Notes: generated from the sequence alone by a model not told the origin. A DNA stretch of 63,797 nucleotides, filler included, from Octopus bimaculoides (GCF_001194135.2; 3 parts of 3 records of this genome joined end to end with filler, not necessarily neighbours in it), one strand, 5' to 3'. Counted from the whole stretch's first letter, positions 4,400-26,363 are shown. A program made the numbers and translations.

Positions 4400-4513
4400 C
4401 TTCCCGTCAACGCGAACAACTCTTTTGCCAGAAGTCGTTCCATGTTCAAATTCTAAGTCATGTACACCATCAGCTAAAGACACTCTCCATTTACCAACCA
4501 GGTCTGAGGGCAT
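4400..4513 (-). CDS. FAIM: Fas apoptotic inhibitory molecule (FAIM), first coding exon (38 aa)
   Basis: Translates MPSDLVGKWRVSLADGVHDLEFEHGTTSGKRVVRVDGK, matching the FAIM N-terminus (W-x-V-x-L-x-DGVH-x-x-EFEHGTTSGKRVV-x-VDGK). Phase-0 donor AAG|GTAAGA at 4400/4399. Acceptor TTTCAG| at 4539/4538 gives 25 nt of 5'UTR. Downstream exons were not found; they may lie in the 700-1619 gap or left of the window. Confidence 0.95.
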
Positions 4514-5732
4514 TATTGTGTGAAAAATTAGCCTCTAACTGAAACAGATCAAAGTTCTTCATAAATGTCTTAAGTCATCACCATCATCCTCATACCCATC
4601 ACTGCCTCTGCAGTGTATCAAATAATGGTATTAAACAATATTATAGATCCATCTCCTCAACTTCTCCTAAACAAACCACAATAAACTACAAATAACACAA
4701 AACTACACACTACGCAACATAACAAAGTTGTACACATGACATCCACAGGTCACCTACGCAATGAAATAAAAACACTAAGAATGAAAGACCATCTAGAGCT
4801 GCCAGGAGCACAGGTTACTACTGCAGTTTACTCCAGCCCTCCAGTAGTTTTTTCAAATATGAAAAATCTATATCCAAGCACACAGACAACAATATAGAAC
4901 ACCAGAATACCCCCTAAAACTGTTTTCCACTCAGTTGGGACAAGCATAACGGGTGCATACATACAAAAATAATTACATGAATAGCCTCACTGCTCTCAAA
5001 CACTGTGATGGGATGCACACCACCAAGAATAAATGCAAAGGAAATACAACTGTCGCTCTCTGCCCGAGACCACCCTACCTGCTGCCGCCTTAATCTACGG
5101 ACGTACAGAAATAAACTGGACAATGGAGAGGATATAAAATGTAGACTGTGACAATGCACCACATACGATTCATCATTGTATATGTGTAGAATGGGATGTG
5201 CAGAATGATCATCAATTAGGCAGACACATGTCATAATTGAGAAAACATGTCTGGATCACGAATTGTCGTTTGACCGATTATCACCGTGCTCGATCATTGC
5301 TGACCTGGGAACACTTAACTGCATCAATAGCACGGTACGATTGTCGTACTGATGATGACTGTAGTGATCTGCATGATGATGATGTTGTTGTTGTTGTTGA
5401 TGATGATGATGATGGTGATGACGATGACGATGGGAATAGGAATAGCGAATCAAGAAGAAAACTAACTTGAAAACGTATATCACCTGCTTAATTCTTTCTT
5501 CAATAACAATTGTGTTGTTGTCGATGATAATGATAATGATTAATGACAATGACGATGGGAATGACAACAAGTGTTGCCAAGCAACGAGTACGCCTTTTAT
5601 TAGTTCTTTTAATGTAATTTACGTGGTATCAATTATGAAGTTACTTTATTGTTTCCCCGCTTGCCATTAAAAAAAGACAAAAACGAAAAATCCTTAGTTG
5701 TCAGATGCTGCTATAGACATGCGACTACTTAC

Positions 5733-5800
5733 ATGAAAAGTAGAATAAAACTATCAAATAAAGCTTATTGACACGCGACCTTTGACAGGAAGTGTCAGCA
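5733..5800 (-). other. FAIM: Probable non-coding first exon (5'UTR) of FAIM
   Basis: Consensus minus-strand donor CAT|GTAAGT at 5733/5732, about 1.2 kb upstream of the FAIM acceptor and next to promoter-like motifs. The 5' boundary is a guess. Confidence 0.55.
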
Positions 5801-5830
5801 GTAATTGGTTAGGAAGCGATTAAGAAAGAC
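5775..5830. promoter_or_regulatory. Candidate (bidirectional) core promoter between FAIM and CEP70
   Basis: ETS/GABP-like CAGGAAGTG at 5786-5794 inside a TGACA-n5-TGTCA palindrome (5783-5797), and an inverted CCAAT (ATTGG 5804-5808), at the head of FAIM. The motifs are seen in the sequence; function is inferred. Confidence 0.4.
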
Positions 5831-6428
5831 GAGGCATTTTATTCGATAATATGATACATAGAAAGAAAGAAAAATGTTGTAATACAGACATTTCTTCATA
5901 ACTAAACAACTCTAAAATTTAAAAAAATAATATTTAGATGCCATTTCAAACCAAAAACTTCATTTATGGTTGAGAATTAAACTTCATTTTTACCGAAAGT
6001 AAACAGTTTCCTTAACGACTGTTGTTGAGTTTTGCGGAGGACAAAACTCCGTGAGATTTTATTTGGTTATAAAACTTTTAAATGATAAACGAATTTCAAA
6101 ATTTCAATTCCGTATTGACGTATTTCAATCGGTACGGGTGCTACTGCTTAAAATTCAAACTTGCTGTTGATTCATTGACTCAGACCGAGCTAGTATTTTG
6201 GGTCAGGTTAAAATGCAATAGTAACACAAATGTGACAGCAGAGAGATTTCCATGAGTTGTAATCTAGATGCAGCCCCCTTAGCGCGTAAAGAGACAAGGA
6301 CCGAAACAATTGCATATGGTTGGGATGCTTCTTCTCTGAAGATCTTTCGCTGTTCTGCTCTACCGGCGTTTCTAACAACCTACTTACCTGCACGCACACG
6401 TGTGTGTATGATGGGATATTTTTTTATA

Positions 6429-6818
6429 ACTCTTTTACTCTTTTACTTGTTTCAGTCATTTGACTGCGACCATGCTGGAGCACCGCCTTTAGTCGAACAA
6501 ATCGACCCTAGGACTTATTCTTTGTAAGCTTAGTACTTATTCTGTCGGTTCCTTTTTACCAAGCCGCTATGTTTTCGGGGACGTAAACACAGCAGCATCG
6601 GTTGTCAAACGATGGTGGGGACAAACAAAAGTGCAGACACACACACATATATGTACGACTGGCTTCTTTCAGTTTCCGTCTACCATATCCACTCACAAGA
6701 CTTTGGTCGGTCCAAGGCTACAGTAGAAGACACTTGCCCAAGGTGCCATGCAGTGGGACTGAACCCGGAACTATGAGGTTGGGAAGCAAGTTTCTTACCA
6801 CACAACCACTTCTGCGCC
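6429..6818 (-). mobile_element. tRNA-derived SINE family A, full length
   Basis: tRNA-like head (GTGGTAAG...GGTTCAGTCCC), central CCTTGGGCAAGTGTCTT segment, internal CA/TA microsatellite, AAAAGAGT tail. Confidence 0.85.
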
Positions 6819-8068
6819 TACAAAATAAAACTTGACATTTTGAAAAAATTATGTGCGCGCGCCCAATAATTACTTTCTTTTTTTTTTACGTTAAGTTCCG
6901 ATATAATCGCAATCAACACCATCTGAAAGGTATTTGCAAAAGCATTCATAAAAAGAATAGTATATCCATTTTTCTGAAAGTTATAAGGAAACAAAGTTGG
7001 TGGGTGGGGCACGTTTGTGTACGTATGCTTATTTCAGTTGCCTTAGAAACCAACTGGGAAAATCCAAAGTTCCACAGTAAGAGACGGTGACAATAATTAG
7101 GCTTGTATTACTACCACTGCTTATTAAATTAAGATTTTCTCTTAAACATGTCAGCCAATATTTTTTCTAATTATTTATTTAATCCTTTCTGAGTCACTAA
7201 CGAATTCCGCTAGAATTTTGCTTTCTTCCATAGCTACAAAGAATATATCAGCCTATAGACATTAGCTTATCTGAGTTATTTCCCTTAGATTATTTGATTC
7301 TCCCCCTCCTCCCACTTTCTCTCACTTGCTTCATTAGTAACTGTTGCTTCGCACCGTGAGCCGAAGCCATACCAACAGCAGAAATTAAATTCTCGTCATT
7401 TGATTCGCTAATAAACGTCAACATGTGAAGGCAAATTACAAAAAAGTTTAAATGTTTTCTATTTTTATAACGAATAAACATTTTTAAGATGCAAGGAAAA
7501 TGGATATGAAAAATATGGAAAGTAAACTGTATGATGTATATAAGTTATTATATGATATTAATAAAAATGAAATTCCAATACAAATTTAAGCCCGGAACAC
7601 GTTTTGTCATGTTTACGAAAGCGGAATATGTTTTTATTCTCAGAGACAAAAAAATGAATACTAACAACAACTACGACAATAACAATATTTTATAAACTTT
7701 AGATATTGATTTAATTTTAAAAGAAGTAAAAAAAAAATTTTTAAAAACCAAACCCATCCATTCAAATATGGTAATTATAAAGTCTTTTTCTTAATTTGTT
7801 TGACTGAAAATAAGGGAAATTGCTTTAAATTTCAGAATATGTTCGATATCAGTTCGAAAGTTCTTTAACAAACTATCATTGAGAAATGCATTAATGTCTC
7901 AATACTTCATACTTCGTTGCTTATAAATCTGAAGTTAACACTTGTTGATTTCTGCATTTTCAATTTGTAAATAACAACCAACCGAAGTAAGTTCCCCCTG
8001 TTTGCTCTCAGAAGTAGACTCTAAATTTCAGAGATTTAGTTGCGATTTCTAATGAATCAAGCTTTATT

Positions 8069-8210
8069 GGTAAATTTTCAGAGTAACACCCGCACGGGGA
8101 TTTGCAGCATATTAGGAAGTCAGGGTACTTGATTTCACGCAAAAAAATCCGAGTTTTTTTTTTTTTTTCTCTTAGTGAAAATCGTGCGGGTGTTACTCTG
8201 AAAATTTACC
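8069..8210. repeat. Perfect 28-bp inverted repeat with 86-nt spacer
   Basis: GGTAAATTTTCAGAGTAACACCCGCACG at 8069-8096 and its exact reverse complement at 8183-8210. Confidence 0.9.
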
Positions 8211-9260
8211 CTTTCCAGAACCTGAGGAAAGTGTTAGAGATTCTGTGAGAAATAGGGAGAAACAAAGATAATTATATGTACATGAACTTTTGAGTCATTT
8301 TTGTGTTTTATTCTATATGGGTAATTTTTTTTGCCAGTGCTGGTGCCATGTAGAAAGCTCCCAGTTCACTCTGTAAAGTGGTTGGCATTAGGAAGGGCAT
8401 CCAGCTGTATAAACTATGCCAAAGCAGACAGTATGGCTTGGTGCAGTCCTCTGGCTTGCCAGCTCCTGTCATACCGTCCAACCCATGCCAGCATGGAAAA
8501 TGGATGTTAAATGATGATAGTGATAATGCACATAAAATATTCCCTAAGACATTTATTCACAGTAAGTAAACCCTACAAGGAAAAATGATCTCTCAATAGA
8601 GATTTGTTGAGGAATTTGGTCTAAACAGTGTATTGGTCAGGACAAAATTACCTGGTGACAATGTCAATTAGCCCTGGGTCACCTCTGTTTGAGTAGACCT
8701 ATGAACAAACATATCCAAGTCATTGCTCTCTATTATTCTGACATAAAAGATCTAAGATTACGTTATCCAATGTGTCTTTTTTTAAGACACTTGAGTGTTA
8801 TTTGAGGAAGATTTGGCTGCTGTTTGGAGATTGAGCAACCATTGACCCTTTAGCATTTAAACTGACCACATCAGACCCAAATATTCTTGCTGTTTTATGT
8901 TCAAACCAACCAGATCCAGCCTCTCACATCTATCCTACAATATCTTTCTAAAAACATACAATCACATCATTGAGATCTCAAAACTACAAGATAATGCATG
9001 ATTAATTCAGAACAATGTGGATGAAGAGCATTACTGTTGACAGAATAATTTGAATGCTAAAGATAGTTAAGAGTCTCCCATTTTCGGTTTCAATGCTCTC
9101 TTTGGTTTTTTTTTCAACAGCACTCAACACCTACTTACCCCATTGTTATTATCTGTCTTTTCCTCTCTTCGACCACACTCTGCTCCTCTAGCTAGGTTGA
9201 TTGTGTATCACGTCTACATGACCTGTTTATTGCAAACTATATATTTTCCTCTACCAATCA

Positions 9261-10084: not shown

Positions 10085-10231
10085 GAACCAAATGGTGACT
10101 GTTCAGGTCACAATCGAAGACATCCAGATGCCAGCGGTGATGGGATTGGCATTGGAATTAGTCCCAGACATTACCAAATACCAAAAGAGGGCGATTTTAT
10201 GAACATGAAATTGAAAGACTGTATGTGGAAG
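10085..10231 (+). CDS. CEP70: CEP70-like exon A (EPNGDCSGHNRRHPDASGDGIGIGISPRHYQIPKEGDFMNMKLKDCMWK)
   Basis: AACAAG| acceptor, AAG|GTATGT donor, 147 nt, open only in frame 0. No recognisable homology on its own; it contains in-frame ATGs. Confidence 0.6.
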
Positions 10232-13200
10232 GTATGTGTTTTTATCATATTTCTCTTTACTTAGAGACACTTCACATTTCTATTTAAGCTAGCAGCTTAG
10301 TCCATATATTGTTAAATTGTTTAATGTTCACTGTTTATTGGGGTGGGGGCAAGAAATACCTAATTAAAAATACATATGACACGTTAGGCTAAGTAAAATC
10401 ATGACGATCCATGCAAACAGGCATGTCCTCTACATCAGGGGTTTTCAAACTTTTTGACGTGCGGACCCCTTTATATTTCAGGCTTTACCTTAGGGACCCC
10501 CTTATAAACGCTTATGAAATTTATACATAAATATTTGCTTAAAATAACATATATTTTTACATTTATTTATTTAACAATATTTAACAAATAGGTTTATTGT
10601 CAATTAAAAGATTTCGATTAAAAAACATATATAAAATCAAATTGCCCATAAAATGTATTTGCTGTCCACGGACACCCTATGGTCCGCGGACCACAGTTTG
10701 AAAACCCCTGCTCTACATCTTTCTTTCTCTCTCTCTCTCTCTCTCTCAGCCAGGTCCTAGTCTTGCAGGATCAGGGGTGCTGGTGTCATGTAAAAGTGCC
10801 CATGCTGGTGTCACATAAAAGCGTCCGTGCCAGTACCATGTAAAAACTCCTGTGTTGGCGCCAGGTGCTTGAGTTGACACCACCTAAAGGTGCCTGGGTC
10901 GATGTCATGTTAAAAGCACCCTGTACACTGTAAAGTGGTTGGTGTTAGGAAGAGTATCCAGCTGTAGAAACCATGCCAAAACTAACAAATGGAGCTTGGG
11001 CGGCTCTCCAGGTGGCCAGCTCCTGTCAGACTGTCCAACCCATGTGACAATGGAGAACGGACGTTAAACGATGTGTTGAGGAAATGACAACACCGTTTTT
11101 AATTTTTAAGAAGTAAGGGTGACAACTAATATTTCACGCTGAATTATGCTGTTGGACATCTACTTAATGATTTTGTAATCAGTAATTGGCAAGTATGGTC
11201 AAGTTTCTTCCTTACAGAGGATGTTTAATAATCTATAACATGTTCAGAGCTGTTTCTTGCGTTTGTCAAAATAATTAAACTAATTGCCATCACCTGAATG
11301 CAGTGAAAGTGCGAATGCTGGAGATAAATGAAGCAAGCATGCTTTCGTAGATGTAATATTGCTGTGAATCAGCAACATGGTATAGATTAGTTGAGGAAAA
11401 AGCTGGATAGAAAAGGAATGAGATGTAGTGTGTTAGAGAGACAATTGCATTGATACAAACATGTTGTTGTTGGCACTCCATCGCTTTCAATGTCGAGGGT
11501 TCCAGTTGATCCGATCAACGGAACAGCCTGCTCGGGAAATTAACGTGCAAGTGGCTGAGCACTCCACAGACACGTGTACCCCTAACGTAGTTCTCAGGGA
11601 TATTCAGCGTGACACAGTGTGACAAGGCTGACCCTTTGAATTACAGGCACAACAGAAACAGAAAGTAAGAGTGAGAGAAAGTTGTGGTGGAAGAGTACAG
11701 CAGGGTTCGCCACCATCCCCTGCCCAGAGCCTCATGGAGCTTTAGGTGTTTTCGCTCAATAAACACTCACAATGCCCGGTCTGGGAATCGAAACCGCGAT
11801 CCTATGACCGCGAATCTGCTGCCCTAACCACTGGGCCATTGCGCCTCCACGATACAAACATGTAATGCATAAGGATTATACAGACGGTTAAATAAGTGTT
11901 AGGAGATTCAATTTGTAAAAAATTGAGTAAGTGGAAAAACAAAGAAGACAGGGACAGAAGTGGTGACATCTGATCTCAGGTTGTTGAACTGCAAGGAAAA
12001 GATGATGATAAAGGAACACAGCAAATGGCAAGATGCTGTTTGGAAGAATCTGTCTAGTCCATGCAAGCAGCATAGGAAAGCCTATTTAAAGATTATGAAG
12101 GTGGTGGTGGTGGTGGTGGTGGTAATGATGATGATAATGATGACGATGAGCTTGAATGTTGATCATACAGGGAAGTTAATGCAAGCACTGGCAACTGATA
12201 TCTATATATATCATATTTGTTTGTGACATGTGTAGTTGGAAATATGGTTGAATTTTTTTTAAGTACTCACTTGACTGCCTCCATATTATGTGACTATTTA
12301 GTGAACCCAGATTAGGGTTATACAACAACTACTGGTATTGAGTTCGATAGGTGTGAAGGCATGGCTTGTATAAAAAAATTCAAATTTGGGTCCAGGCTCT
12401 GCATTGAAATAAACCAGGTATTTAACATTTTAGCATTCAAATTATTCTGTCAAATGTAATACTTAACTATACATGTTGCTTGGAATTAATCATGTAGCTC
12501 TCAGCTTTTGATGATGTGATTGTTTATTTTTAGAATGACATTGTAAAGTAGGTATGAGAGGCAGGATCTGGCCAGTTTGAACCCAAAACAGGTAGAATAA
12601 ATTGGTCAGATATGGCTGGTTTAAATACTAAAGGGTTAATGAGTAGGTGGGTGTTTAATAATTCTCTAACTTCAAAATCCATATTTTTTTTTATCTATCA
12701 TCTTTCCATTCAACTGCAGGATCAGAAATTCCACCCACAAAGGTCTGATATTCTTTCTGAGTTCCAGCGCCACACAACCAATATCCAATCTCTTATGAAT
12801 GAAAAGTAAGTCAGTCTTATTAGATTTTTTTTGTTTATATGAAATATCCCATTAGTGACCAGTGAAGGCATGAATGCTTCAGCTTCTGTTTTGTCTGTGT
12901 AAGTAAAGTTACGACTGTCTAGTGCTGGTGTACAATATTCTACAGACACGTGTTGTATATACTACTAATTTTATTATTGTTTAGATTTTTTTTTTATATA
13001 TGCTGGGTCTAGAGGAAAGGGCAGTACCCTTAGTTTTTGCAAGACCTCCTTGACCAGTGTAATTGATATCATTAATCCTCTTCGTCATCGTTGTCATCAT
13101 AGTTGTTGTTGTCATCATTGTCGTTGTCGTCATCATCATCATTTTAACATCCACTTTCCTATACTTGCATGGGCTGAATGAATTACACTGAAGCCCATCT

Positions 13201-13390
13201 ATGGCTGGACGCCTTTCTTGTCACCAACCCTCGCCTGTTTCCTAGAAAGGTGATATTCCCCATGGCCAGACAATGGCCAGACATATTTTTGTTGCAGAAA
13301 ATTGGAAATGAATGACACCCCTTGTATGACATTGACACTTACTTATGACTACCACTCCATGTGAAGACAAAGCGAAACACACACTCACAT

Positions 13391-13425
<35 letters not shown>

Positions 13426-15157: not shown

Positions 15158-17466
15158 ACCACTACCACCATTATTTAATGCCTGTTTTCCATGTTGGCAT
15201 GGGTTGGACCAGGGACCTCACCAGGCTCCAGTCTGATGTGTCTTGGTTTTTATGGCTGGATGCCTTTCTTAATCCTTTAGACACCAACCCACCTGAAACT
15301 GCCCTTGGTCCTATGATACAAATTTCCTATTTTAAAGTAACCTAGTTTAAAATTTCCATGAAAACTTCATGTTAATTTATGTTCCAAATCCCAGCTGAAT
15401 AATGTCAGAGATATTTTAAAATATTTTTTATTATTTTCAAAATAAATTGAAAAAAAAAGGCTGTGTATTTCATCAGAAATATGGTAATGGAAGGGTTAAT
15501 GCCAGCCACTGTACAGTGTGTGTTGGGTGCTTTTAACATGGCACCAGCATGAGTGCTTTTATGTGGCACAACTTTCACATGGCACCAGCATGAGTGCTTT
15601 TATGTGGCACAACTTTCACATGGCACCTGCCCAGGACTCTTGCAGGCCAATCCTCTTCACCAGGAGATGTGGCCCTAACACTTCTTCTGTCAAGAGCAGG
15701 TCTTCTTGAGTACAACAAAGCACCAAATATCTTATTCCTTTGTCATCTTGTTTGAAAGGTTTAGTGTCCTGAGATCATCCTTCAGTATTTTTCCCCATGT
15801 CTTCCTGGGTTTCCCTCTTCCATGAGTTCCATTCACTTTGAGAGATTGACATTTCTTTATAGAATTGTTGGCATCCATCTGCATCACATGACCAGACTAG
15901 TGCATTCTTCTCTCTTGCACACTGCATCTAATTCCTCTTATGCCCAACTTCTCTCTCAATACACTAGCACTCTGTCACACAAGCACACTTACTTTACACA
16001 TCCAGTGGAGCATACTAACTTCATTCCTCTCTAGCCTTCACATGTCCTCTTGCATTCAGGGCCCATGTTTCACCACCATGTAGAATTGCTGTTCATATAC
16101 ATGCATCATACTACCTTCCTTTCACTTGGAGAGAGAAACCTTTCATAGCCTACAAAAGTAAAACCTCTCTGAATTTTCTTCATCTTATTCTTATTCTAGC
16201 CATCACCCTCTCCATATGTCCTTCCCCACTACTAATTTGGTCTCCTAGGTAACAGCTAAAGAAGTACTAAGCCCATAAGAGTGGAAGGAACTTGCAGTTT
16301 TCTGAAAAAAAAAAATGGACACACTGGAAAATGTCTAAGTTTTGCTCAATCACAGCTGTGCAGAGACTAAACAACTAATCTGACATGAAGTTCCTAATGC
16401 GTTTGTATGGAAAACAGATGTTAAACGATGATGATGATGATATGTCTATGTACATATTCAGTATTCAACTCAGGAAGACCCAGTGATATTTGGGCAGAAG
16501 TGGTGAAAGCTTTACCCAGGGTGCAGAATCTCAGGAAGATAATGAATGACCTTAACTAGTTGCCATATGCAAATATGGAAAAAAATAGACATAAAAATAG
16601 CAATGGTGGAGTTGCCTTATTTATAAGATATTTTAATGCTTCCTCTTTTGATAAATAGATACTTTTAGCATAACCTTTAGATGTTTCTTTTTTCTTCTAC
16701 CAACCTTACTGGAATTTATTTACTTTCAGAATCAGGAGAAGACCCTGAAAGACTATGTCAAGAAAGTCAACCTGCTGGAAGCAAAACTGAAAATGTTAGA
16801 GTTGGAAAAACAGTCAAGGTAGCCATCATAACATTCATTAATTTCACAACTCTTGTAGCTTCTGATCTGTATTTTGGTGTCCCTACCAGCAATTAATATA
16901 TACCCGTCAGAGTGTAAGTATCTTGAGAGAAAAGCTGAACATAAGAAGCATCAGTAGTGGTGTGCAAGAGAGACGATTGCGCTGGTTTGGACATGTGGTG
17001 AGAATGAATGAGGATAGCTGCGTGAAAAAGTGCCACTCCCTAACAGTTGAGGGAACCCGTGGAAGAGGTAGGCCCAGGAAGACCTGGGCTGAGGTGATGA
17101 GGCAAGACCTTCAAACATTGGGCCTCACCGAGGTGATGACTACTGACCGAGACCTTTGGAAATGTGCTGTGCGTNNNNNNNNNNCACCTGACTGGCCTTG
17201 TTGGGTTTTCGAGCGAGATCGTTGCCAGTGCCCCTGGACTGGCTCTTGTGCGGGTGGCACATAAAAGTCACCATTTCGAGCGTGGCCGTTTTCGTGCGGG
17301 TGACACGTAAAAGCACCCACTACACTCTCTGAGTGGTTGGCGTTAGGAAGGGCATCCAGCTATAGACACTCTGCCAAATTAGATTGGAGCCTGGTGTAGC
17401 CATCCGGTTGCACCAGTCCTCAGTCAAATCGTCCAACCCATGCTAGCATGGAAAGCGGACGTTAAC

Positions 17467-17502
<36 letters not shown>

Positions 17503-20500
17503 ACCAGTTGCCAGGTATGTGTTTATTACGTGAAATTGATATATCCAATTGGGTTACACTTATTTAAGTTACAGCTATTCAAGCAATGTGTTCTTCGATT
17601 TTGTGATGAAGAAGGAGTAAGAAGCCCTGAAATTATGCAAATACACCCATTACTTATTTTCCCATCTTTGATCATATTGTTTACGTAGACGTATTTGTAC
17701 ATGACATGTAACGTTCAGTGCTGGCTCTGGTTTTTATAGAAAAAGTTTTATTTATTTATTCTATTTCATTTTTTTAATTCCCTCTTAAATTCTCGGCTTC
17801 ATGTATATCTGTGTCTATACTTTCAGAGTGAGTACCAAGGACTCGAGGACGTCACCTAATGCATCTTGTCATAAATTTGTTGATAATGAGAGTTGTAAGG
17901 AGACACAACAATCACACAATGACAGGTTAAATTTACAGGTAAGTTAATTAGAAATCTCTCAGTGTGGCTGTGTGGTAAGAAATTTACCTCCCAACCACAT
18001 GTTTCTAGGTTCGGTCCCATTGCATGGCCCCTTGGGCAAGTCTATTCTACTATAGCCCTGGGCTGACAAAAGCCTTGTGAGTGGATTTGGTAGACGGAAA
18101 TTGAAAGAAGTCCATCGTGTGTGTGCTTGTGTCCATATATGTGTGTGTGTCATTGTGTTTGTCCCCCCTCCCATCACTGTTTGACAACCAGTGTTGGTTT
18201 GTTTACATCCTTGTCACTTAGTAGTGTGGCGAAAAGAGACCAATAAAATAAATACCAGGCTTAGAGAAAAAATAAGTGCTGTTGATTTGTTTGACTAAAC
18301 TCTTCAATGCAGTGCCCCAGCATGGTCGCAGCACAGTAACTGAAACAAATAAAAGATAAACAATATATTTTGTTTGTTTTCATCTTTTTTCTTTACTTTG
18401 AATTTGTAGAGAGTTTATTTATTTGAACTTTAGAAGCTGGCACAAAATGTATATTGGTGTCGATGGTGGTATGAAGGTAGCTTTGAAGGTGTTGGTGGTT
18501 GTGATAGGAAGTGTTGATGGTAATAAGTGGTAGTGTTGGTGATAGTAATAGTGGTGACAATAATAATAGTGACGGTGTTGATGGTGGAGTTGTTGGTTGT
18601 GGTGTCGATAATAGTATGATGCTGATCACGTCATTGTTGGCGGCGGGGATGGTGGTGTAAGATGAAGGGGATGTGATTGTCTTAGGAAGATGACGATGAC
18701 GATGGTGATGGTAATGATGATTGATGCTGCTGGTGGCAGTGGTGGTGGTGGTGGTGGTGGTTGTTTGATGATCTGAATACTGTGACCGACCTCATGAAGT
18801 TGGACTAGATCAACCCTGATCTATCTGACATGAAATGACTTTCATTTCATTCTTATAACTATCATCTGCAAATAGTTGAGTGCCCTGTAACTAGAAAAGC
18901 CAAACAACAAAAGGCATAGATGTTAAAAGGAACTCTTTTACTTGTTTCAGTCATTTGACTGCGGCCATGCTGGAGCACCACCTTTAGTCGAACAGATCGA
19001 CCCCAGGACTTATTCTTTGGAAGCCTAGTACTTATTCTATCGGTCTCTTTTGCCGAACCGCTAAGTTACGGGGACATAAATACACCACCATTGGTTGTCA
19101 AGTGACGTTGGGGGGACAAACACAAACACACAAACACACACACACATACATACATACATACATATATTATATACAACGGGCTTCTTTTAATTTCCGTCTA
19201 CCAAATCCACTCACAAGGCTTTTGTCGGCCCAAGGCTATAGTAGGAGACACCTGCCCAAAGTGCCACAAAGTGGGAACGAACCCGGAACCATGTGGTTGG
19301 TAAGCAAGCTACTTACCACACAGCCATGTGTTTCATTCTTTAAAGGTCAATAAAAATAGGTACTGGTTTTACCCTTTAGCATTTAATCTGGCCCAAATAT
19401 TCTGCCTCTATTATCTTCAAATTGGTCAGATCTGGCCTCTCACTCCTAATCTACAATATTAATCTAGAAATAAACAATCACAGCATTGAAATCTTGTAGC
19501 TATGAGGTAATAAATGATTAATTCAAAACAATGTGAATAAATAATAATTACATTTGACAGAGTGATCTGAATGATAACCAACTGACTGGGACTCAGTCGG
19601 TTATGACTACGAGGGTTTCCAGTTGATTCCAATTGACGGAACAACCTGCTCATGAAATTACCATGCAAGTGGTTGAGCACTGGACAGACATGCGTATCTG
19701 TAGCATAGCTCTCGGGGAGATTCGGAGTGAGATGAATGTGATAACGCTGGCCCTTTGAAATACAAATACTGCTCATTTTTGCTAGCTGTGCAGACTGGAG
19801 CAATGAGAAGTAAAATGTGTTGTTCAAGAACACAACAATATACGTAGTGGTTAAGAGCGCAGGCTACTAACCCCAAGATTCCAAGTTCGATTCCAAGCAG
19901 TTACCTGAAAAATAATAATAATAATAATGATAATAACATCGAAAAATACCTTAGGAATGAGAACCCAGGTTCAAAATTTCCCCAAGATACCTGAAGAAGG
20001 CTGGAGGGTATATCAGCCGAAACATTGTGTTAACAACAAACAAGATGAGGACAAATATCCGTTGAATGTAAATAATGTAAACAACAATATACTGCTAGGA
20101 ATCGAACCCATGACCTTTCCATCATGAGCTGCATGCCTTCACTTATCTGAATGATAAAGGGTTAATTTACAATACCCCACNNNNNNNNNNNNNNNNNNNN
20201 NNNNNNNNNNNNNNNNNNNNNNNNNNNNNNNNNNNNNNNNNNNNNNNNNNNNNNNNNNNNNNNNNNNNNNNNNNNNNNNNNNNNNNNNNNNNNNNNNNNN
20301 NNNNNNNNNNNNNNNNNNNNNNNNNNNNNNNNNNNNNNNNNNNNNNNNNNNNNNNNNNNNNNNNNNNNNNNNNNNNNNNNNNNNNNNNNNNNNNNNNNNN
20401 NNNNNNNNNNNNNNNNNNNNNNNNNNNNNNNNNNNNNNNNNNNNNNNNNNNNNNNNNNNNNNNNNNNNNNNNNNNNNNNNNNNNNNNNNNNNNNNNNNNN

Positions 20501-23500
20501 NNNNNNNNNNNNNNNNNNNNNNNNNNNNNNNNNNNNNNNNNNNNNNNNNNNNNNNNNNNNNNNNNNNNNNNNNNNNNNNNNNNNNNNNNNNNNNNNNNNN
20601 NNNNNNNNNNNNNNNNNNNNNNNNNNNNNNNNNNNNNNNNNNNNNNNNNNNNNNNNNNNNNNNNNNNNNNNNNNNNNNNNNNNNNNNNNNNNNNNNNNNN
20701 NNNNNNNNNNNNNNNNNNNNNNNNNNNNNNNNGTGGCACGTAAAAAAGCACCAACCGATCGTGGCCGTTGCCAGCTTCCTCTGGCCCCTGTGCTGGTAGC
20801 ACATAAAAGTGCCCACTACACTCATGGAATGCTTGGCATTAGGAAGGGCATCCAGCTGCCAGATCAGACTGGAGCCCGGTGCAGCCGCCTGGCTTCCCAG
20901 ACCCCGGTCGAACTGTCCAACCCATGCTAGCATGGAAAAACGGACGTTAAACGATGATGATGCTTGCATATGCATGCATGAATACACATGCTTGCCTACA
21001 GTTTGGAGGCAAACTGCAAGGAAGGTGTTTTTCAACATTGCTATATTATTTTTCACTCGTTAGATTAGGTTGGATGGATTTACAAATCCTTAATTATATC
21101 TTCATGTAAAATGTTATTTAAAATATATATATATATATATTTACTTTAGATTGTGAATTGTTAGTATTCTAGTTTTTTTGTTTTTACATAACCTAAGTGG
21201 CCTCATATAAAAGATTATTGTTATTGTTGGGTAAAACACTTCTGGTAAATTGAATCTACAATATGATTTCAAACACCAATTGTAGCTATTTCTCCTTCAC
21301 ATAGGGCCTTAACACATAAAGCACGACGGGCCACAATTGTGGCTGTCAGGCACAGGTCGACAGGCTACAATCGTGGCCCAGATAGATGCATTTAATTTAT
21401 GGGCGTTTGTTGGGGTCTAACCTTGCTCAAACGCTCCAATACCCACCAGAATGCAAGAGGACTAATAGTTCAACTAATGATTTTTCAGTTGGAAGCTTTG
21501 ATAAAGCAAGTATGAGTCCTGGCATCTTATAACAGAAACAGCTGTAAGCTAATGAAGTTCATAAGATAATCCTTTATTCTTTTGTCATCTCATTTTCTCG
21601 TGTGTGTGTGTGTGTGTACCTTTGACTTGATATCGTGTGATGGTTGTAAATGAGCATCAGTGTCGTACAAGTGTTGCTGTTCATTTCCAGTCTTTAATGA
21701 AAAACATGCCTGGCCATGTGGAAATATGAACTTGCTTGGAGACAGGTGAGGGTTAGTGAGAGGAAGAGCATCCAGCAGTAGAAAATATGCTTCAGCAAAT
21801 TTCATCTGACCCATGCAAGCATGGTAAAGTGGACATTAAATGATGATGATGAACTGTTATATACATTCTTGTTTCTATTTTGTGGTAGTTTTGCATGCTA
21901 AGAAAAGGCTCAGTAGTGCTATCAGATATCAACATAGACTGCAGTTCTTCTGTATGGAATTGTGCCAATAAGGTATTAACATTTTTTTTTCTTTTTTACA
22001 GTATTGCTCTAAACTCTGCAGCTTGGTTCAACAGACACAAAATGGGAACACTGAAGAACAACATGATATGACTTCACGGCCTGTTCTTTCCGATGACACT
22101 CTAAAATATGTTCTTGAAATGTTGGCCTTAGCCAACGATGACTTTCAGAATCGTCAGGTAATAATCATCTCTTATGTACAAAAATGCCTGTTATATTATA
22201 TGAGAAACAAAATGTCAGTGAGCCAGTAAGGTGGTGAGCTGGCAGAATCATTAGTACGTCAGATAAAATGTTTAGTTTCTGTCTTTACATTCGGAGTTCA
22301 AATTCCACTGAGGTTGAATTTGCCTTTTATCATTTCAGGGTTGATGAAATAAGTACCAGTTGAGCTCTGGGGTTGATGCAATCTTGATTATCTGCTTCCC
22401 CCACAAATTTCAGGCTTTAGTAGAAAGAATTATGTAAGAAACAAATTATATAAGAAGCACAACGGCAATGTGCTGGTAAGGTGGTGAGTTGGCAGAATTA
22501 TTAGCAGACTGGACGAAATGCATTGCATATGTCTGAACATTCTGAGTTCAGATTTTGCTGAGATCAACTTTACCTTTTATCCTTGATGAAATAATTATCA
22601 TTTCAGCACTGGGGTTAGTGTAATCTCAACTGTACTCCACTCACAAAATTTGGGGTCTTGTGTCTATAGTAGAAAGCATCCTTTGATATTCTCCTCCATG
22701 TCTTGGGCCCTTGTATTCAATAAAAGAAATCATTATATTATTATATAAGAAATTACTTCCAAAAAACGTTATCATTTTTTTTTTAAATGGGGGCGATTTG
22801 CTCGACTAAAGGCGGTGCTACAGCATGGCCACAGTCAAATGACTGAAACAAGTAAAAGAGAGAGTATTGCATGAAAAATTTGTATTTTATGCAAAATTGT
22901 TATGTCAGAAATCATTACAAAAGACATTATTATTTTGAAAAAAAATTATTATCATTTAAGGAATTAGTAGTTTATACAAAATTATTAATATTATGTAAGA
23001 AATTATTATTCTGTACAAAATTACTGTTATGGGTGCAGATAAAGACAACCAAACATATTTATTTACCAAAAAGTTATCAAAGAAGGCGATGTTAGCAATA
23101 AGATAGTTATATCACACCCAGTACGCACACATCTGGATCTCACAAACTAAGCAGCAAAAAAGGTTGGTGAAATTTGTGAAACTGGTGTTTAGCTTTTAAG
23201 ATATCATCAATATTTGCTTTGGAATTGCTGCATTTAACCAAGAGAATTGCTTTGAAATGTTCATCAAGTCAGCCTCGTTCGATGTGCTGACCTCACATCT
23301 TTTATTTATAAAAATGCTTGCTCACAGACATAAGTTGTTCCAAACACTGATGCCATACCAGAGGATTGCAGGTACTTACACAAAAGGTACAATGTGGTGG
23401 TGGGCCGGATGAACTGACCTTGCAGGCCATTGTTTGGTGACCCTAGCTATAAACAAACCATCTGTGTGGTTGTTCAGCAAGAAATTGCAAAACCCTTATA

Positions 23501-25686
23501 CATTGTGTAACGATGGGAGAGTTCATAATATATATATATATATGTGTGTGTGTGTGTTTCTGTTTGTCTCCCACCTCTTCCCTGTAACTTAGCGTTTCAG
23601 CAAAAGAGGTTGACAGAATAAGTTCTGGACTTTAAAAGAAAGTACTGGGGTTGACTTGTTCTGCTAAACCCCTTAAGGTTGTGCTCCAGCATGGCCACAG
23701 TCCTAAGACTGAAACAAGTAAATGATAAAAGATGTAAGAAATTATTATTTTGTACAAAATTATTTTTATGTAAGACGTTATTTTACTCTGATTCTTATTT
23801 GATACAAAACGGGTGATGATGGGATCTATGGTTTAACTTCTACTCTTGTTGAGCCTCAAATTATTTCTAATCCAGTGGATCAAGGATCAAAGATATTCCT
23901 GTGTAATCACCTTGTTTTAGTCTTTCAGAAATAATCAACCTTGGATTAGACTGTTGATCAAATCTTTGATCCATAAGCCTTTCAACCATGACTATCCTAT
24001 CTTTTTACGTGTGTGTAAGACTACATTATCTAATGTGTCGTTTCTTTGTTTCAATATTATATGCTTTGAAGAAGACTTTGCTGCTCTTTTTAGCAAGTCA
24101 AACAACCACATAGTGACTCTTTTGTTTCATTTCTTCCAAAAATGGGTTTCTGTTGCTGTTTGTTTTTAATCTCCATTTTCCGAAATCTTTACATCATTTT
24201 TCAGGATCTAGTTACCTGTTTCAATGAAATACTTACCTCCATTGTGCCTTGGACCAACATACAGCTTCATCCTTCCGACTCTTTTCAAGAAATGGTCACA
24301 AAGTTACAAATGGTCAATCAGTCATGTAATCACATTATTACCAAGGTTGGTGAATAAAACCCTTTTTTTTCGTAATCAAAAATCCTTCATTTTGCCCATC
24401 AAGTTAACATCTTTTTTCCCTTCGTTTCCACTGATTGGATGTATGTCCTTATAGCAGTAGATCTATAAAAGGTTATGATTACTGTCTGTCCTCCTAAGGC
24501 TAAGGATTAAATATAAATCCAATTTGACAGATAAAACCTTTTATTTTTTCAAGGAAACAGGGGAATTAGACTCTCACAAATACCCAGGAGGCTTCCTTGA
24601 AGTTGGAGGTAATTTGTGTGGCCCTTTTCTCTCTACAGCCAATACCACTTTGTCATCTCTCTTTGCTGTCTTCCCTCTGCCAACTGTACCAATGCTATCC
24701 TATTGGTCCCCTACATACTCATGTTTCCTCACTCACTGCAATTCCTCCTGCACCTTCATGAACCCCCTACTCATGCACCCAGAGCAACCCCCTATTATTC
24801 CATCTATATTCACACACTTGTACTTTGAGTGTATTCTCTGGCACATTGCCCCTGTTTCCCTCACTCCCCCTCTGACTGGGGGTAACCATGTATCTTCTCT
24901 ACTTCAAGACACCTGTTTCTGTCCCTTTATCGTAGATTAATCTCTCATCACCTGGCATAGAGATGCCTACTTCTGTATCACTCCCTCTTTCAGTTGAGGG
25001 CCCTTTGCCTTGCATGTTATGTGGTGACCTCAGTAGTGCTGGCGCTACATAAAAAGCATCCTACCACTTTGTAAAGTGGTTGACATTAGGAAGGGCACTC
25101 ACCTGTAAAAACCATGCCAATGCAGACAGAAGAGCTTGCCACAGTCCCCAGGATTACCAACTCCTGTCTAACCATCCAACAGATGCCAGCATAGAAGACA
25201 GACATAAGATTTTGTTGCTAAAATTTATGTGCAATAAACTGGTTGTACTCTTACAGTAAGACAAAGTATTTTAACAACTTTTAATACAATTCCTTGCTTT
25301 CTAAGCACATGGTTCTAGGTTCAGTCCCGCTGTGTGGCATCTTGGTCAAGTGTCTATTACTATAGTCTCAGGTTGACCAAAGCGAGTGGATTTGGTAGAC
25401 AGAAACTGAAAGAAGCCCATCATATATATATATGTGTGTGTGTATGTGCATATATATATATATATATATATACTCTTTACTCTTTTACAAACACAGACAC
25501 TCAAACATATATATATACATATACATATATACGACGGGCTTCTTTCAGTTTCCATCTGCTAAATCCACTCACAAGGCTTTGGTTAGCCCAAGGCTATAGT
25601 AGAAGACACTTACCCAAGGTGTCACGCAGTGGGACTGAACCCGGAACCATGTGGTTGGTAAGCAAGCTACTTACCACACAGCCACT

Positions 25687-25762
<76 letters not shown>

Positions 25763-26363
25763 AGTATATATGTATATGTGTGTATTTGTGTCTTTGTGTT
25801 TGTCCCCTCCTCCACCCACTGCTTGACAACTGGTGTTGGTATGTTTATATCCCCGAAACTTACTGATTTGGCAAAAAAAGACTGACAGAACAAATACCAG
25901 ACTTAAAGAAAAAAAAAAGGACTGGAGTCAATTCATTTGACTAAAAATTCTTCAAGTAAAAGAAAAATGATAACAATATAATAGGATTTTTTAAACAACC
26001 AATGGCTTTGAGGGTCCACGCAAGTATATTAAGAATCAAGGGGTCTATAAGTTAAAAAATAGTTGAGAACCATTGCTCGGTGGCATCATGCATCACTCAT
26101 AACCTGTTCTTCTTCAGCCACTATTTGTCCTCCTCCACATTTTACTGTCTCAAGTTTCACTGTGAATTTCTTGTTTCCAACCTTTTCTTCTCAGGATGAG
26201 CAGGATTCGTCTAGTGCTGCTTTAGAAAATCTCATCCAACATTTCCAGATATTATTTGAAGTTCCTACCTTATCCGGCATCTACCCAGCCATGAACCAGG
26301 TCTATACAAAGGTCGGGGAATTGCAGAACATCATGAAAATTCTGAAGACTTTGTTAGGACTGG
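10085..26363 (+). CDS. CEP70: Centrosomal protein of 70 kDa (CEP70)-like gene, 8 coding exons, 964 nt spliced; 5' and 3' ends unresolved
   Basis: Exons 10085-10231, 12720-12805, 15009-15072, 16730-16818, 17827-17938, 22002-22157, 24205-24345 and 26195-26363 all have AG/GT ends, with phases 0-0,0-2,2-0,0-2,2-0,0-0,0-0,0-1 that chain into one open frame. The last two exons resemble the human CEP70 segments I recall (LVPW; [30 protein letters not shown]). Confidence 0.85.
10436..10710. mobile_element. hAT (Charlie/SPIN-type) MITE, 275 bp
   Basis: TIRs CAGGGGTTTTCAAACT / AGTTTGAAAACCCCTG and 8-bp TSD CTCTACAT at 10428-10435 and 10711-10718. Confidence 0.92.
11465..11850 (-). mobile_element. tRNA-derived SINE family B, full length, 13-bp TSD
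   Basis: A box TGGCCCAGTGG and B box GTTTCGATTCC. TSD GATACAAACATGT at 11452-11464 and 11851-11863. Confidence 0.9.
12422..12639. mobile_element. TTAA-flanked MITE-like repeat; related copies at about 8842-9070 and 19368-19575, different family at about 15272-15500
   Basis: TTAAC(C/A)(C/T)TTTAGCATT ... AAT(A/G)CTAAAG(G)GTTAA imperfect termini, with a shared interior between copies. Confidence 0.6.
12720..12805 (+). CDS. CEP70: CEP70-like exon B (DQKFHPQRSDILSEFQRHTTNIQSLMNE)
   Basis: CTGCAG| acceptor after a pyrimidine tract, |GTAAGT donor, phase 0-2. Confidence 0.8.
15009..15072 (+). CDS. CEP70: CEP70-like exon C (KKHQSIEEEEGFLSHKSVLHR)
   Basis: TTACAG| acceptor, AGG|GTAAGT donor, phase 2-0. 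Confidence 0.8.
15510..16245 (-). mobile_element. Degraded RTE LINE 3' fragment
   Basis: Reverse strand reads GTHGRGKPRKTW...DDLRTL and matches 2500-3100 and 16920-17170. Confidence 0.8.
16730..16818 (+). CDS. CEP70: CEP70-like exon D, coiled coil (NQEKTLKDYVKKVNLLEAKLKMLELEKQS)
   Basis: TTTCAG| acceptor, AAG|GTAGCC donor, phase 0-2, heptad-like sequence. Confidence 0.8.
16920..17500 (+). mobile_element. RTE LINE 3' end with (GAT)n tail
   Basis: LREKLNIRSISSGVQERRLRWFGHVVRM...GTRGRGRPRKTW, followed by the 3' UTR and GAT repeats. Confidence 0.9.
17827..17938 (+). CDS. CEP70: CEP70-like exon E (VSTKDSRTSPNASCHKFVDNESCKETQQSHNDRLNLQ)
   Basis: TTTCAG| acceptor, CAG|GTAAGT donor, phase 2-0. Confidence 0.8.
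17961..18359 (+). mobile_element. SINE family A
   Basis: Head-to-tail match to the other copies. Confidence 0.8.
18931..19326 (-). mobile_element. SINE family A
   Basis: Full-length reverse copy. Confidence 0.85.
19844..20080 (+). mobile_element. tRNA-headed retroposon with hammerhead-like motif, 12-bp TSD, inserted in an older minus-strand SINE
   Basis: A box TAGTGGTTAAG 19845-19855, B box GTTCGATTCC 19885-19894, TSD ACAACAATATAC at 19832-19843 and 20081-20092. The host SINE continues on both sides (about 19590-19843 and 20093-20140). Confidence 0.85.
19986..20031 (+). ncRNA. Minimal type-I hammerhead ribozyme-like motif (PLE style)
   Basis: GAUAC-CUGAAGA-A-GGCUG(loop)CAGCC-GAAA-CAU-U-GUGUU. 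Core nucleotides, stem II and a 5-bp stem I (two G-U pairs) are present. Stem III is a near-palindromic ACAU with no loop. Confidence 0.6.
22002..22157 (+). CDS. CEP70: CEP70-like exon F (YCSKLCSLVQQT...LKYVLEMLALANDDFQNRQ)
   Basis: Poly-T tract with TACAG| acceptor, CAG|GTAATA donor, 156 nt, phase 0-0. Confidence 0.85.
22225..22680 (+). mobile_element. Two tandem copies of an older SINE family C; minus copy at about 38200-38480
   Basis: GTAAGGTGGTGAG(C/T)TGGCAGAAT...GAGTTCA(A/G)ATT repeated at about 22226 and 22475. Confidence 0.7.
23160..23356 (-). mobile_element. hAT transposase C-terminal (dimerisation) remnant
   Basis: MASVFGTTYVCEQAFL*IKDVRSAHRTRLT, then a frameshift, then DEHFKAILLVKCSNSKANIDDILKAKHQFHKFH. 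Matches the FGSTY-x-CE...RSRLTDEHL pattern. Confidence 0.75.
24205..24345 (+). CDS. CEP70: CEP70-like exon G (DLVTCFNEILTSIVPWTNIQLHPSDSFQEMVTKLQMVNQSCNHIITK)
   Basis: TTTTTCAG| acceptor, AAG|GTTGGT donor, 141 nt, phase 0-0. The VPW motif is shared with CEP70. Confidence 0.85.
25300..25970. mobile_element. Nested SINE A: plus copy interrupted in its microsatellite by a minus-oriented head
   Basis: Plus head about 25300-25435, minus head about 25480-25690, (TA)n, plus tail about 25770-25970. Confidence 0.7.
26195..26363 (+). CDS. CEP70: CEP70-like exon H, conserved C-terminal helical region
   Basis: DEQDSSSAALENLIQHFQILFEVPTLSGIYPAMNQVYTKVGELQNIMKILKTLLGL. TCTCAG| acceptor, G|GTAAAT donor (phase 1). 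Strongest CEP70-like segment. Confidence 0.9.

What the first reader, a model, noticed from the sequence alone, without database searches (positions are those of the whole stretch)
4400..26363. FAIM and CEP70 head-to-head, as in human
Seen: FAIM (-) and a CEP70-like gene (+) diverge from a short interval containing ETS and CCAAT motifs. Established: human CEP70 and FAIM are adjacent, divergently transcribed genes at 3q22.3, and coleoid genomes are heavily rearranged relative to the ancestral bilaterian order. Inference: this pairing predates the protostome-deuterostome split and is held together by a shared promoter, linking an apoptosis/proteostasis factor with a centrosomal protein.
Basis: partly seen in the sequence, partly recalled or inferred. 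Interest (0 to 1): 0.7.

Follow-up and report, generated by a model that had tools for sequence, protein, structure and literature searches.

The report
Octopus FAIM–CEP70 head-to-head gene pair
The window holds the first exon of octopus FAIM and most of CEP70, facing away from each other as in vertebrates; the pairing looks ancient but has been lost in several lineages, and a shared promoter is not shown.

Summary
FAIM exon 1 lies on the minus strand (4513→4400) and a true CEP70 orthologue on the plus strand (ATG 7768–7770, then nine AG/GT-bounded in-frame exons, 10085–26363). The window is Octopus bimaculoides. NCBI annotates its CEP70 as two genes because a 99-nt exon is hidden in the 20181–20732 gap; the other two gaps are intronic.

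The start codons are 3254 bp apart, which is not a short interval. An ETS-like site (5785–5794) and an inverted CCAAT (5804–5808) exist, but such motifs occur no more often than chance. Both 5' ends open into one CpG-undepleted domain (5000–8250; o/e 0.95 against 0.35 elsewhere).

The divergent pair recurs in O. sinensis, a teleost (1.5 kb apart), the hemichordate Ptychodera and an unidentified metazoan contig. Chicken has the genes adjacent, and human papers report shared eQTLs. It is absent within 10 kb in Nematostella (partner is ATIC), amphioxus, a nemertean and a bivalve.

Inheritance from the bilaterian ancestor is well supported, but not anything older. "Held together by a shared promoter" stays an inference. 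Octopus CEP70 also lacks the family's conserved N-terminal ~160 residues. This is an ordinary new example of conserved head-to-head microsynteny.

The parts
4400..4513 (-). FAIM coding exon 1 (38 codons, MPSDLVGKWRVSLADGVHDLEFEHGTTSGKRVVRVDGK), donor GGGAAG|gtaaga
   Evidence: Pfam FAIM1 E=2.4e-13; PDB 3mx7 E=2.1e-13; 100% identical to O. sinensis FAIM exon 1; the same ...VDGK| exon boundary is seen in 11 unrelated FAIM fragments
4514..4547 (-). Short FAIM 5'UTR stretch plus a candidate 3' splice acceptor (ctgtttcag on the minus strand; + strand 4539-4547). If used, the ATG exon is exon 2 and the FAIM TSS lies further right
   Evidence: Read from the sequence. Inference only; no transcript data
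5000..8250 (.). CpG-undepleted (presumably unmethylated) promoter-like domain between the two start codons. It contains the CEP70 ATG but not the FAIM ATG exon
   Evidence: CpG o/e 0.95 against 0.35 for the rest of the window; highest of 103 sliding 3.25-kb windows
5785..5808 (.).
   Evidence: Present and identical in O. sinensis, but motif counts are at or below chance and background identity is 0.90-0.96
6429..6819 (.). Interspersed repeat copy (a family with at least 7 copies in the window) inside the intergenic domain
   Evidence: Self-blastn; also multi-copy in O. sinensis
7768..7770 (+). Annotated CEP70 initiator ATG, immediately followed by donor GTAATT; this exon contributes only Met to the CDS
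   Evidence: The O. sinensis CDS range starts at the homologous ATG|GTAATT (L005:10001), conserved in the window. Exon 10085 starts directly after an AG acceptor, and the annotated proteins begin M-EPNGD
10085..10231 (+). CEP70 coding exon (aa 2-50); no similarity to the N-terminus of other CEP70s
   Evidence: 100% to XP_014782992.1; AG/GT; the profile alignment begins only at aa 37
12720..12805 (+). CEP70 coding exon
14335..14403 (+). CEP70 coding exon (IFDIVEAYERRIKLLEKDLEYYQ; family motif, profile positions 204-230)
14584..14651 (.). Assembly gap inside an intron; no coding residues lost. The homologous intron is 7.8 kb in O. sinensis against 0.6 kb here, so the gap may hide several kb
15009..15072 (+). 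CEP70 coding exon
16730..16818 (+). CEP70 coding exon
17175..17184 (.). Assembly gap inside an intron, within a repeat; no coding residues lost
17827..17938 (+). CEP70 coding exon; ends in phase 0. The NCBI model LOC106878313 reads through its donor (…LNLQVS*)
20181..20732 (.). Assembly gap that hides one CEP70 exon (ELYQALDVENSNQLLPAIQKMKHNLKSMAKYRQ in O. sinensis, 99 nt) and caused the gene to be annotated as two genes
   Evidence: P0012 aa 191-220 are missing from the window. The exon is present in O. sinensis between the flanks that align to either side of the gap. Phase 0 on both sides
22002..22157 (+). CEP70 coding exon; starts in phase 0
24205..24345 (+). CEP70 coding exon
26195..26363 (+). 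CEP70 coding exon carrying the most conserved family motif (…HFQ.LF.VP.LSG.YP.MN.VY…). The last 85 residues of the protein are not in the window
   Evidence: 200 library proteins at E<=1e-3, including annotated CEP70 from 15+ animals; profile E=2e-23

Best explanation
The window is the Octopus bimaculoides FAIM-CEP70 locus: two orthologous housekeeping-type genes on opposite strands with their 5' ends facing.

Shown: the gene identities, exon structure, divergent orientation, a 3254-bp ATG-to-ATG spacer, and recurrence of the same arrangement in a mollusc, a hemichordate, vertebrates and one unidentified metazoan.

Inferred: the juxtaposition was inherited from the bilaterian (protostome-deuterostome) ancestor, not assembled twice. 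It then broke independently in several lineages.

Most likely mechanism (inferred, not shown): both genes start within one ~3.2-kb unmethylated, CpG-undepleted promoter domain (5000-8250) and are transcribed divergently from it. A rearrangement breakpoint would have to fall in this small, promoter-dense spacer and would damage at least one gene. That lowers the rate of separation without forbidding it. This is weak, promoter-proximity constraint, not tight functional coupling of apoptosis and centrosome biology.
For: - Gene identity.
- The arrangement is not an assembly artefact. The O. sinensis chromosome-level record has FAIM1 (-) and CEP70 (+) with CDS starts 3.3 kb apart.
- Teleost Aldrovandia affinis: FAIM1 (-) and CEP70 (+) CDS ranges 1.48 kb apart.
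- Ptychodera flava: complete FAIM (-) at L008 47.5-44.2 kb, Pfam E=2e-28 and 7e-17. It faces CEP70 (+) exons at 61.5 kb and 84.4-104 kb.
- Unidentified metazoan contig L001: FAIM (+) at 10001 and CEP70 N-terminal exons (-) at 2462-2316 and 939-679, E=1.3e-7 and 7.6e-15.
- Chicken gene order is FAIM, CEP70, ESYT3 (PMC11507135). In human, CEP70 shares eQTL with FAIM (PMC8599203).
- A squid-octopus block containing FAIM1 and an un-annotated neighbour is catalogued (PMC9023564 supplementary file 3).
- A single CpG-undepleted domain spans both 5' ends: o/e 0.95 against 0.35, top of 103 windows.
Against: - No transcript, CAGE, ATAC or methylation data, so the TSSs are unknown. The 3.25 kb between start codons exceeds the usual 1-kb definition of a bidirectional promoter.
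- Spacing between first coding exons varies from 1.5 kb to ~14 kb among species.
- ETS and CCAAT motifs are not enriched, and no conservation peak is visible.
- The pair is broken in Nematostella, amphioxus, Tubulanus and, within 10 kb, Solemya. No CEP70 exon was found in 10 anonymous FAIM-bearing metagenome contigs with at least 4 kb of upstream sequence.
- The survey covers few species with only 10-kb flanks, so absences in large genomes are soft.
Confidence: 0.6

Rival explanations
1. Passive retention. The pair is ancestral but persists only through inertia, because a short spacer offers few breakpoints. There is no shared regulation or functional coupling, and the two genes have independent promoters inside the 3.25-kb spacer.
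For: The pair was lost in at least three or four of the lineages sampled. Spacing varies from 1.5 to 14 kb. No motif enrichment or conservation peak is seen. CEP70 readily pairs head-to-head with a different gene, ATIC, about 250 bp away in Nematostella.
Against: The pair survived in coleoids, whose genomes were extensively restructured (PMC9023564). Human CEP70 and FAIM share eQTLs. One continuous CpG-undepleted domain, not two, spans both 5' ends.
Confidence: 0.3
2. FAIM is nested in CEP70 rather than head-to-head with it. The missing conserved N-terminal CEP70 exons would lie beyond FAIM, to the left of the window, so that FAIM sits antisense inside a long CEP70 intron, as the Ptychodera annotation suggests.
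For: Octopus CEP70 as annotated lacks family-profile positions 1-164. In Ptychodera, the annotated CEP70 CDS range (L008 10001-104050) encloses FAIM, and a second copy of the CEP70 5' exons lies beyond FAIM's 3' end.
Against: Three independent octopus annotations start at the same ATG|GT exon next to the CpG domain. The profile finds no N-terminal exon anywhere in the window or in ~45 kb of O. sinensis sequence that includes the whole FAIM gene, yet it finds them easily in other species. A profile search with N-terminal regions found no cephalopod protein.
Confidence: 0.06
3. Convergence. Octopus and deuterostomes acquired the FAIM-CEP70 juxtaposition independently.
For: The pair is absent in the other spiralians sampled (nemertean; bivalve within 10 kb) and in amphioxus. 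Coleoids created many new microsyntenies (PMC9023564), and the FAIM block is catalogued there as squid+octopus only.
Against: Among roughly 20,000 genes, the chance that the same two genes become immediate neighbours twice, in the same divergent orientation, is of order 1e-4 or less per lineage (my own estimate). The arrangement is also found in a hemichordate and in an unidentified further metazoan.
Confidence: 0.04

Closest known systems
Human and vertebrate CEP70-FAIM neighbours at 3q22.3
   Same: The same two orthologous genes are adjacent, on opposite strands, with 5' ends facing. This was confirmed here in a teleost. It is consistent with the chicken gene order and with shared eQTLs in human.
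   Different: - The octopus start codons are 3.25 kb apart, against 1.48 kb in the teleost. The human spacing was not measured here; from memory it is roughly 10-15 kb.
- Octopus CEP70 lacks the conserved N-terminal ~160 residues and starts with a one-codon exon.
- Octopus FAIM is 181 aa, while the teleost record encodes a 201-aa product with an extra upstream coding exon.
Conserved metazoan microsyntenic and head-to-head (bidirectional) gene pairs, as catalogued for cephalopods in Schmidbaur et al. 2022 (PMC9023564)
   Same: Unrelated genes are kept adjacent across phyla. The pair was retained in coleoids despite genome restructuring, and it lies in a CpG-rich promoter region.
   Different: - A two-gene pair falls below the three-gene block threshold of such catalogues.
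- The FAIM-containing block there is classed as squid+octopus only and is not named FAIM-CEP70.
- No paper in the searchable library describes this pair's synteny or a CEP70 bidirectional promoter.
- A TSS spacing under 1 kb, the usual definition of a bidirectional promoter, is not established.
Nematostella CEP70-ATIC head-to-head pair
   Same: CEP70 again sits in a compact divergent pair, about 250 bp between CDS ranges.
   Different: The partner is an ATIC-like gene (MGS + AICARFT_IMPCHas), not FAIM. So CEP70's partner is not fixed across Metazoa.

Membership tests
FAIM (Pfam PF06905, Fas apoptotic inhibitory molecule) | N-terminal domain sequence with the EFEHGTTSGKRVV core | tested here: met
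   Exon 1 matches PF06905 positions 2-34, E=2.4e-13, 50.6 bits against a cut-off of 22. 75% identical to human FAIM NTD chain 3mx7_A.
FAIM (Pfam PF06905, Fas apoptotic inhibitory molecule) | Complete two-domain protein (~180 aa) | not testable with these tools
   Only exon 1 (38 codons) is in the window. The orthologous O. sinensis gene encodes 181 aa with a PF06905 label.
CEP70 (Pfam PF27977; own profile of 23 full-length proteins) | C-terminal conserved region (…HFQ.LFDVP.LSGVYPRMN.VY…) | tested here: met
   Window exon 26195-26363: profile E=2e-23. There are 200 homologues, and the best ones are annotated CEP70 in molluscs, a nemertean, a bryozoan, a hemichordate, amphioxus, vertebrates and Nematostella. 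The O. sinensis orthologue carries the precomputed PF27977 label. The local Pfam copy lacks PF27977.
CEP70 (Pfam PF27977; own profile of 23 full-length proteins) | Central region, colinear with the family (profile positions 165-488) | tested here: met
   P0012 aligns to profile positions 165-629 in one stretch, E=3e-84. The window exons reproduce it colinearly.
CEP70 (Pfam PF27977; own profile of 23 full-length proteins) | Conserved N-terminal region (EW..VN..L..HGL and DC.RRQ.L.QDLI..NNQL; profile positions 1-164) | tested here: not met
   Absent from the annotated octopus proteins and undetectable in all six frames of the window and of the O. sinensis loci. It is readily found in Solemya, teleost, Tubulanus and L001. 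The gene is still the orthologue, but an N-terminally truncated or replaced form.
Bidirectional-promoter gene pair | Opposite strands, 5' ends facing | tested here: met
   FAIM ATG at 4513 (-), CEP70 ATG at 7768 (+).
Bidirectional-promoter gene pair | Transcription start sites less than about 1 kb apart | not testable with these tools
   No transcript or CAGE data. The ATG-to-ATG distance is 3254 bp. A candidate acceptor 25 nt upstream of the FAIM ATG would allow a FAIM TSS further right, inside the CpG domain, but this is inference.
Bidirectional-promoter gene pair | Shared CpG-rich, unmethylated promoter region with enriched ETS/NF-Y/Sp1-type sites | tested here: inconclusive
   One CpG-undepleted domain at 5000-8250. 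However, ETS, CCAAT, Sp1, NRF1, YY1 and CRE motifs are at or below chance.
Ancient bilaterian microsynteny | Same adjacency in both protostomes and deuterostomes | tested here: met
   Octopus (2 species) against Ptychodera and a teleost, plus chicken from the literature.
Ancient bilaterian microsynteny | Presence in a non-bilaterian outgroup | tested here: not met
   Nematostella CEP70 is flanked by ATIC-like and TRRAP-like genes, with no FAIM sequence in 30 kb. Only one cnidarian was tested.

The most novel reading that the evidence does not exclude
FAIM-CEP70 is a truly constrained bilaterian bidirectional unit that survived the coleoid genome scrambling because the two genes share one promoter. 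In octopus, CEP70 was remodelled at that promoter: it lost the conserved N-terminal coiled-coil region and gained a one-codon first exon plus a novel 49-residue exon. This would link the regulation of a proteostasis/anti-apoptosis factor to that of a shortened centrosomal protein.
Probability: 0.15. Interest if true: 0.45.

Novelty: new member of a known kind. Interest (0 to 1): 0.3.

Why it matters
If the pair is constrained, it adds one clean two-gene example of deep head-to-head microsynteny that survived the coleoid genome reorganisation. The example is easy to test for divergent promoter activity and co-expression. In practical terms, the analysis shows that the O. bimaculoides gene LOC106878313 ("uncharacterized") is the 5' half of CEP70, split off by an assembly gap. 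It also shows that octopus CEP70 lacks the family's N-terminal region. Neither point changes any general view: conserved divergent pairs number in the hundreds, and this one is broken in several lineages.

Tried and rejected
That collection holds mostly exon-sized ORF fragments, not reference animal proteomes.
- Recalled human FAIM and CEP70 sequences served only as leads to locate exons. Every conclusion was re-based on database proteins, Pfam or my own profile.
- The local Pfam copy lacks PF27977, so CEP70 membership could not be scored with the curated model.
- Two weak hits were rejected as chance. One matched window exon D in L002, 0.5 kb from FAIM (E=0.066, wrong position for a late exon). 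The other matched exon A in L003. Neither was supported by the profile.
- I first read the two O. sinensis CEP70 records as a tandem duplication. I rejected this because the exons map only once, except for one 69-nt exon present twice.
- A conservation profile against O. sinensis is flat at 0.90-0.96 and therefore uninformative.
- The motif enrichment test was negative.
- Scanning 38 metagenome FAIM loci found no CEP70 exon. Only 10 had at least 4 kb of upstream sequence, and all are taxonomically anonymous.
- The organism behind L001 could not be identified; its nearest named CEP70 is 45-58% identical.
- The N-terminal profile search found no cephalopod protein.
- P0178 lies on a 12,300-bp contig, the same length as the contig behind FAIM locus L048. 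It is not in the fetched part, so this could not be verified.
- Rfam and tRNA scans of the window were empty.
- Two context look-ups returned no record (Tubulanus isoform X2 and Mya).
Full report
**What is in the window**

The piece is AT-rich (39% G+C), repeat-laden animal DNA with eight assembly gaps.

On the minus strand, ATG at 4513 opens a 38-codon exon that ends at a canonical donor (GGGAAG|gtaaga, 4400).
- It matches Pfam FAIM1 (E=2.4e-13) and human FAIM structure 3mx7.
- It is 100% identical to exon 1 of the annotated O. sinensis FAIM.
- Eleven unrelated FAIM fragments from public assemblies break at the same …VDGK| position.
- No other FAIM exon is present in 1-4400. The rest of the gene lies in the 700-1619 gap or beyond the left edge.

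**CEP70 identity**

An exhaustive HMMER search with the exon at 26195-26363 found 200 proteins at E<=1e-3.
- Public sources name the best ones "centrosomal protein of 70 kDa". They come from Octopus sinensis, O. vulgaris, O. bimaculoides, bivalves, a gastropod, a nemertean, a bryozoan, Ptychodera, amphioxus, fishes, amphibians and Nematostella.
- The O. sinensis protein (P0012, 463 aa) maps colinearly to nine plus-strand exons.
- I solved the exact boundaries. All nine have AG/GT, and their splice product reproduces the O. bimaculoides proteins XP_014782992.1 and XP_014782980.1 residue for residue. So the window is O. bimaculoides.
- The initiator ATG sits alone at the end of an upstream exon (7768-7770|GTAATT). 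This is conserved with the start of the O. sinensis CDS.

**The gaps**

- Gaps 14584-14651 and 17175-17184 are intronic, and no residue is lost.
- Gap 20181-20732 hides one 99-nt exon (33 aa in O. sinensis). The flanking exons end and begin in phase 0, so the frame is continuous.
- This gap explains why NCBI annotates the gene as two loci. "Uncharacterized LOC106878313" (192 aa) reads through the donor at 17938. A 250-aa "CEP70" begins with an artificial first exon near 18447.
- The last 85 residues are outside the window.

**The interval between the genes**

The start codons are 3254 bp apart, against 3338 bp in O. sinensis.
- CpG observed/expected is 0.95 across 5000-8250 and 0.35 elsewhere. 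This is the top of 103 sliding windows. I read it as one unmethylated promoter domain.
- The domain contains the CEP70 ATG but not the FAIM ATG exon. A good acceptor (ctgtttcag) lies 25 nt upstream of the FAIM ATG. FAIM may therefore have a non-coding first exon inside the domain. That is inference.
- The ETS-like ACAGGAAGTG (5785-5794) and an inverted CCAAT (5804-5808) are there and are identical in O. sinensis. Counts of ETS, CCAAT and six other promoter-type motifs (Sp1, NRF1, CRE, YY1, TATA) are at or below expectation.
- Octopus-octopus identity is 0.90-0.96 in introns, spacer and exons alike. So neither the motifs nor their conservation carry weight.

**Synteny survey**

I looked up genomic contexts, with 10-kb flanks, for FAIM fragments and CEP70 proteins. 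These records give CDS ranges, not transcript ranges.

Linked, opposite strands, 5' ends facing:
- O. sinensis: 3.3 kb between CDS starts.
- The teleost Aldrovandia affinis: 1.48 kb. The FAIM product is 201 aa.
- Ptychodera flava: FAIM (-) runs from 47.5 to 44.2 kb, Pfam-confirmed. It faces CEP70 exons at 61.5 kb and 84.4-104 kb. A second copy of the CEP70 5' half lies at 13-27 kb, so the annotated CEP70 range encloses FAIM.
- An unidentified metazoan 1.3-Mb contig, L001: the CEP70 N-terminal exons lie 7.5 kb upstream of FAIM on the other strand, E=1.3e-7 and 7.6e-15.

From the literature:
- Chicken gene order is FAIM, CEP70, ESYT3 (PMC11507135).
- Human CEP70 shares eQTLs with FAIM (PMC8599203).
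- A squid-octopus block holds FAIM1 and a neighbour without Pfam annotation (PMC9023564 supplement).

Not linked within 10 kb:
- Nematostella: an ATIC-like gene is head-to-head about 250 bp away, with a TRRAP-like gene downstream.
- Amphioxus: flanked by FASTK-like and O-fucosyltransferase genes.
- Tubulanus: flanked by a zinc-finger gene and POLE.
- Solemya: nothing within 10 kb.
- tblastn confirmed that these loci contain no FAIM sequence.
- Ten anonymous metagenome FAIM contigs with at least 4 kb of upstream sequence show no CEP70 exon.

**Interpretation**

The same two genes in the same divergent orientation occur in a mollusc, a hemichordate and vertebrates. Inheritance from the bilaterian ancestor explains this far better than convergence. 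My own estimate is that chance re-juxtaposition is of order 1e-4 per lineage.

The pair has been broken repeatedly and is absent from the one cnidarian tested. So the constraint is weak, and nothing dates the pair before Bilateria.

The mechanism I favour is divergent transcription from one compact unmethylated promoter domain. This makes breakpoints between the genes rare and costly. It rests only on the CpG pattern, the compact spacing in teleost and octopus, and the human eQTL sharing. TSS positions, accessibility and co-expression are untested. Purely passive retention remains a serious rival.

**Side finding**

Octopus CEP70 aligns to my 23-protein family profile only over positions 165-629 (E=3e-84).
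- The conserved N-terminal ~160 positions are missing from the annotated proteins of three octopus species.
- They are undetectable in the window and in ~45 kb of O. sinensis DNA.
- They were not found in any cephalopod protein by a profile search.
- The same profile finds them easily in bivalve, nemertean, teleost and L001 DNA.

Either octopus CEP70 has truly lost or replaced its N-terminus, or those exons lie far away. The latter is the nested-gene rival, which I rate as unlikely.

**Novelty**

The annotations of both genes and the vertebrate adjacency are already public. The cross-phylum conservation of this particular pair is not described in the searchable literature, but it belongs to a well-known class of conserved head-to-head microsyntenies. 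I rate it a new member of a known kind, of modest interest.

Noticed in passing
window 10085-17944 and 18447-26363: O. bimaculoides CEP70 is annotated by NCBI as two genes: 'uncharacterized LOC106878313' (XP_014782992.1, 192 aa, reads through the donor at 17938) and 'CEP70' (XP_014782980.1, 250 aa, with an artificial first exon MYIGVDGGMK near 18447). The cause is the exon hidden in the 20181-20732 gap.
   Followed up: yes
window 7768-10231; L004/L005: Octopus CEP70 (three species) lacks the family's conserved N-terminal ~160 residues. It starts instead with a one-codon exon plus a 49-residue exon that has no similarity to other CEP70s. No N-terminal exon is detectable nearby.
   Followed up: partly
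L007 2299-20001 (Nematostella vectensis): Nematostella CEP70 is head-to-head with an ATIC-like gene (MGS + AICARFT_IMPCHas), with only ~250 bp between CDS ranges. A TRRAP-like gene lies downstream.
   Followed up: no
L008 13021-27161 versus 61495-87501 (Ptychodera flava): The 5' half of CEP70 (aa 24-248) is present twice at 77-100% protein identity, on either side of FAIM. The annotated isoform mixes exons of both copies and encloses FAIM. FAIM itself is not among the genes on record there. This is either a real segmental duplication or uncollapsed haplotypes.
   Followed up: partly
L005 25162-25230 and 26178-26246 (O. sinensis); window 14404-15008: The 69-nt CEP70 exon (aa 101-123) occurs twice about 1 kb apart in O. 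sinensis, where the CDS record is split. The preceding intron is 7.8 kb there but 0.6 kb in the window, so the 68-N gap at 14584-14651 may hide several kb.
   Followed up: partly
L010 1-8523 (Aldrovandia affinis): The teleost FAIM record encodes 201 aa. Its CDS range extends 2.6 kb upstream of the canonical MSGDLVG exon (5950). This implies an extra N-terminal coding exon, reminiscent of the mammalian long isoform, which brings the FAIM and CEP70 start codons to 1.48 kb apart.
   Followed up: no
window 6429-6819, 9259-9638, 17962-18360, 18932-19326, 25293-25914, 27978-28481 and others: An interspersed repeat of ~400 bp occurs at least 7-10 times in the window and also in O. sinensis, in both orientations, often flanked by (TA)n or (CA)n microsatellites. 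One copy lies inside the intergenic CpG domain. Neither ARAGORN nor Rfam detects a tRNA-like part.
   Followed up: partly
window 1644-1924 (-) and 2273-2555 (+): An inverted pair of repeat copies, each with an ORF giving a sub-threshold PHD-finger match (E=7e-5 and 2e-4). It lies where FAIM exon 2 would be expected by colinearity with O. sinensis. Probably decayed mobile-element fragments.
   Followed up: partly
L048 (contig JAEEGL016914350.1, 12,300 bp) and protein P0178: A CEP70 N-terminal exon fragment (P0178) is recorded on a 12,300-bp ENA contig, the same length as the contig that carries a distant FAIM-like exon (L048). The fragment is not in the fetched 1410-12300, so co-location could not be verified.
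   Followed up: partly
window 5350-5440 and 5510-5560: (GAT)n/(ATG)n trinucleotide microsatellites lie inside the promoter-like domain. This is the least conserved 200-bp bin of the spacer against O. sinensis (identity 0.80).
   Followed up: no
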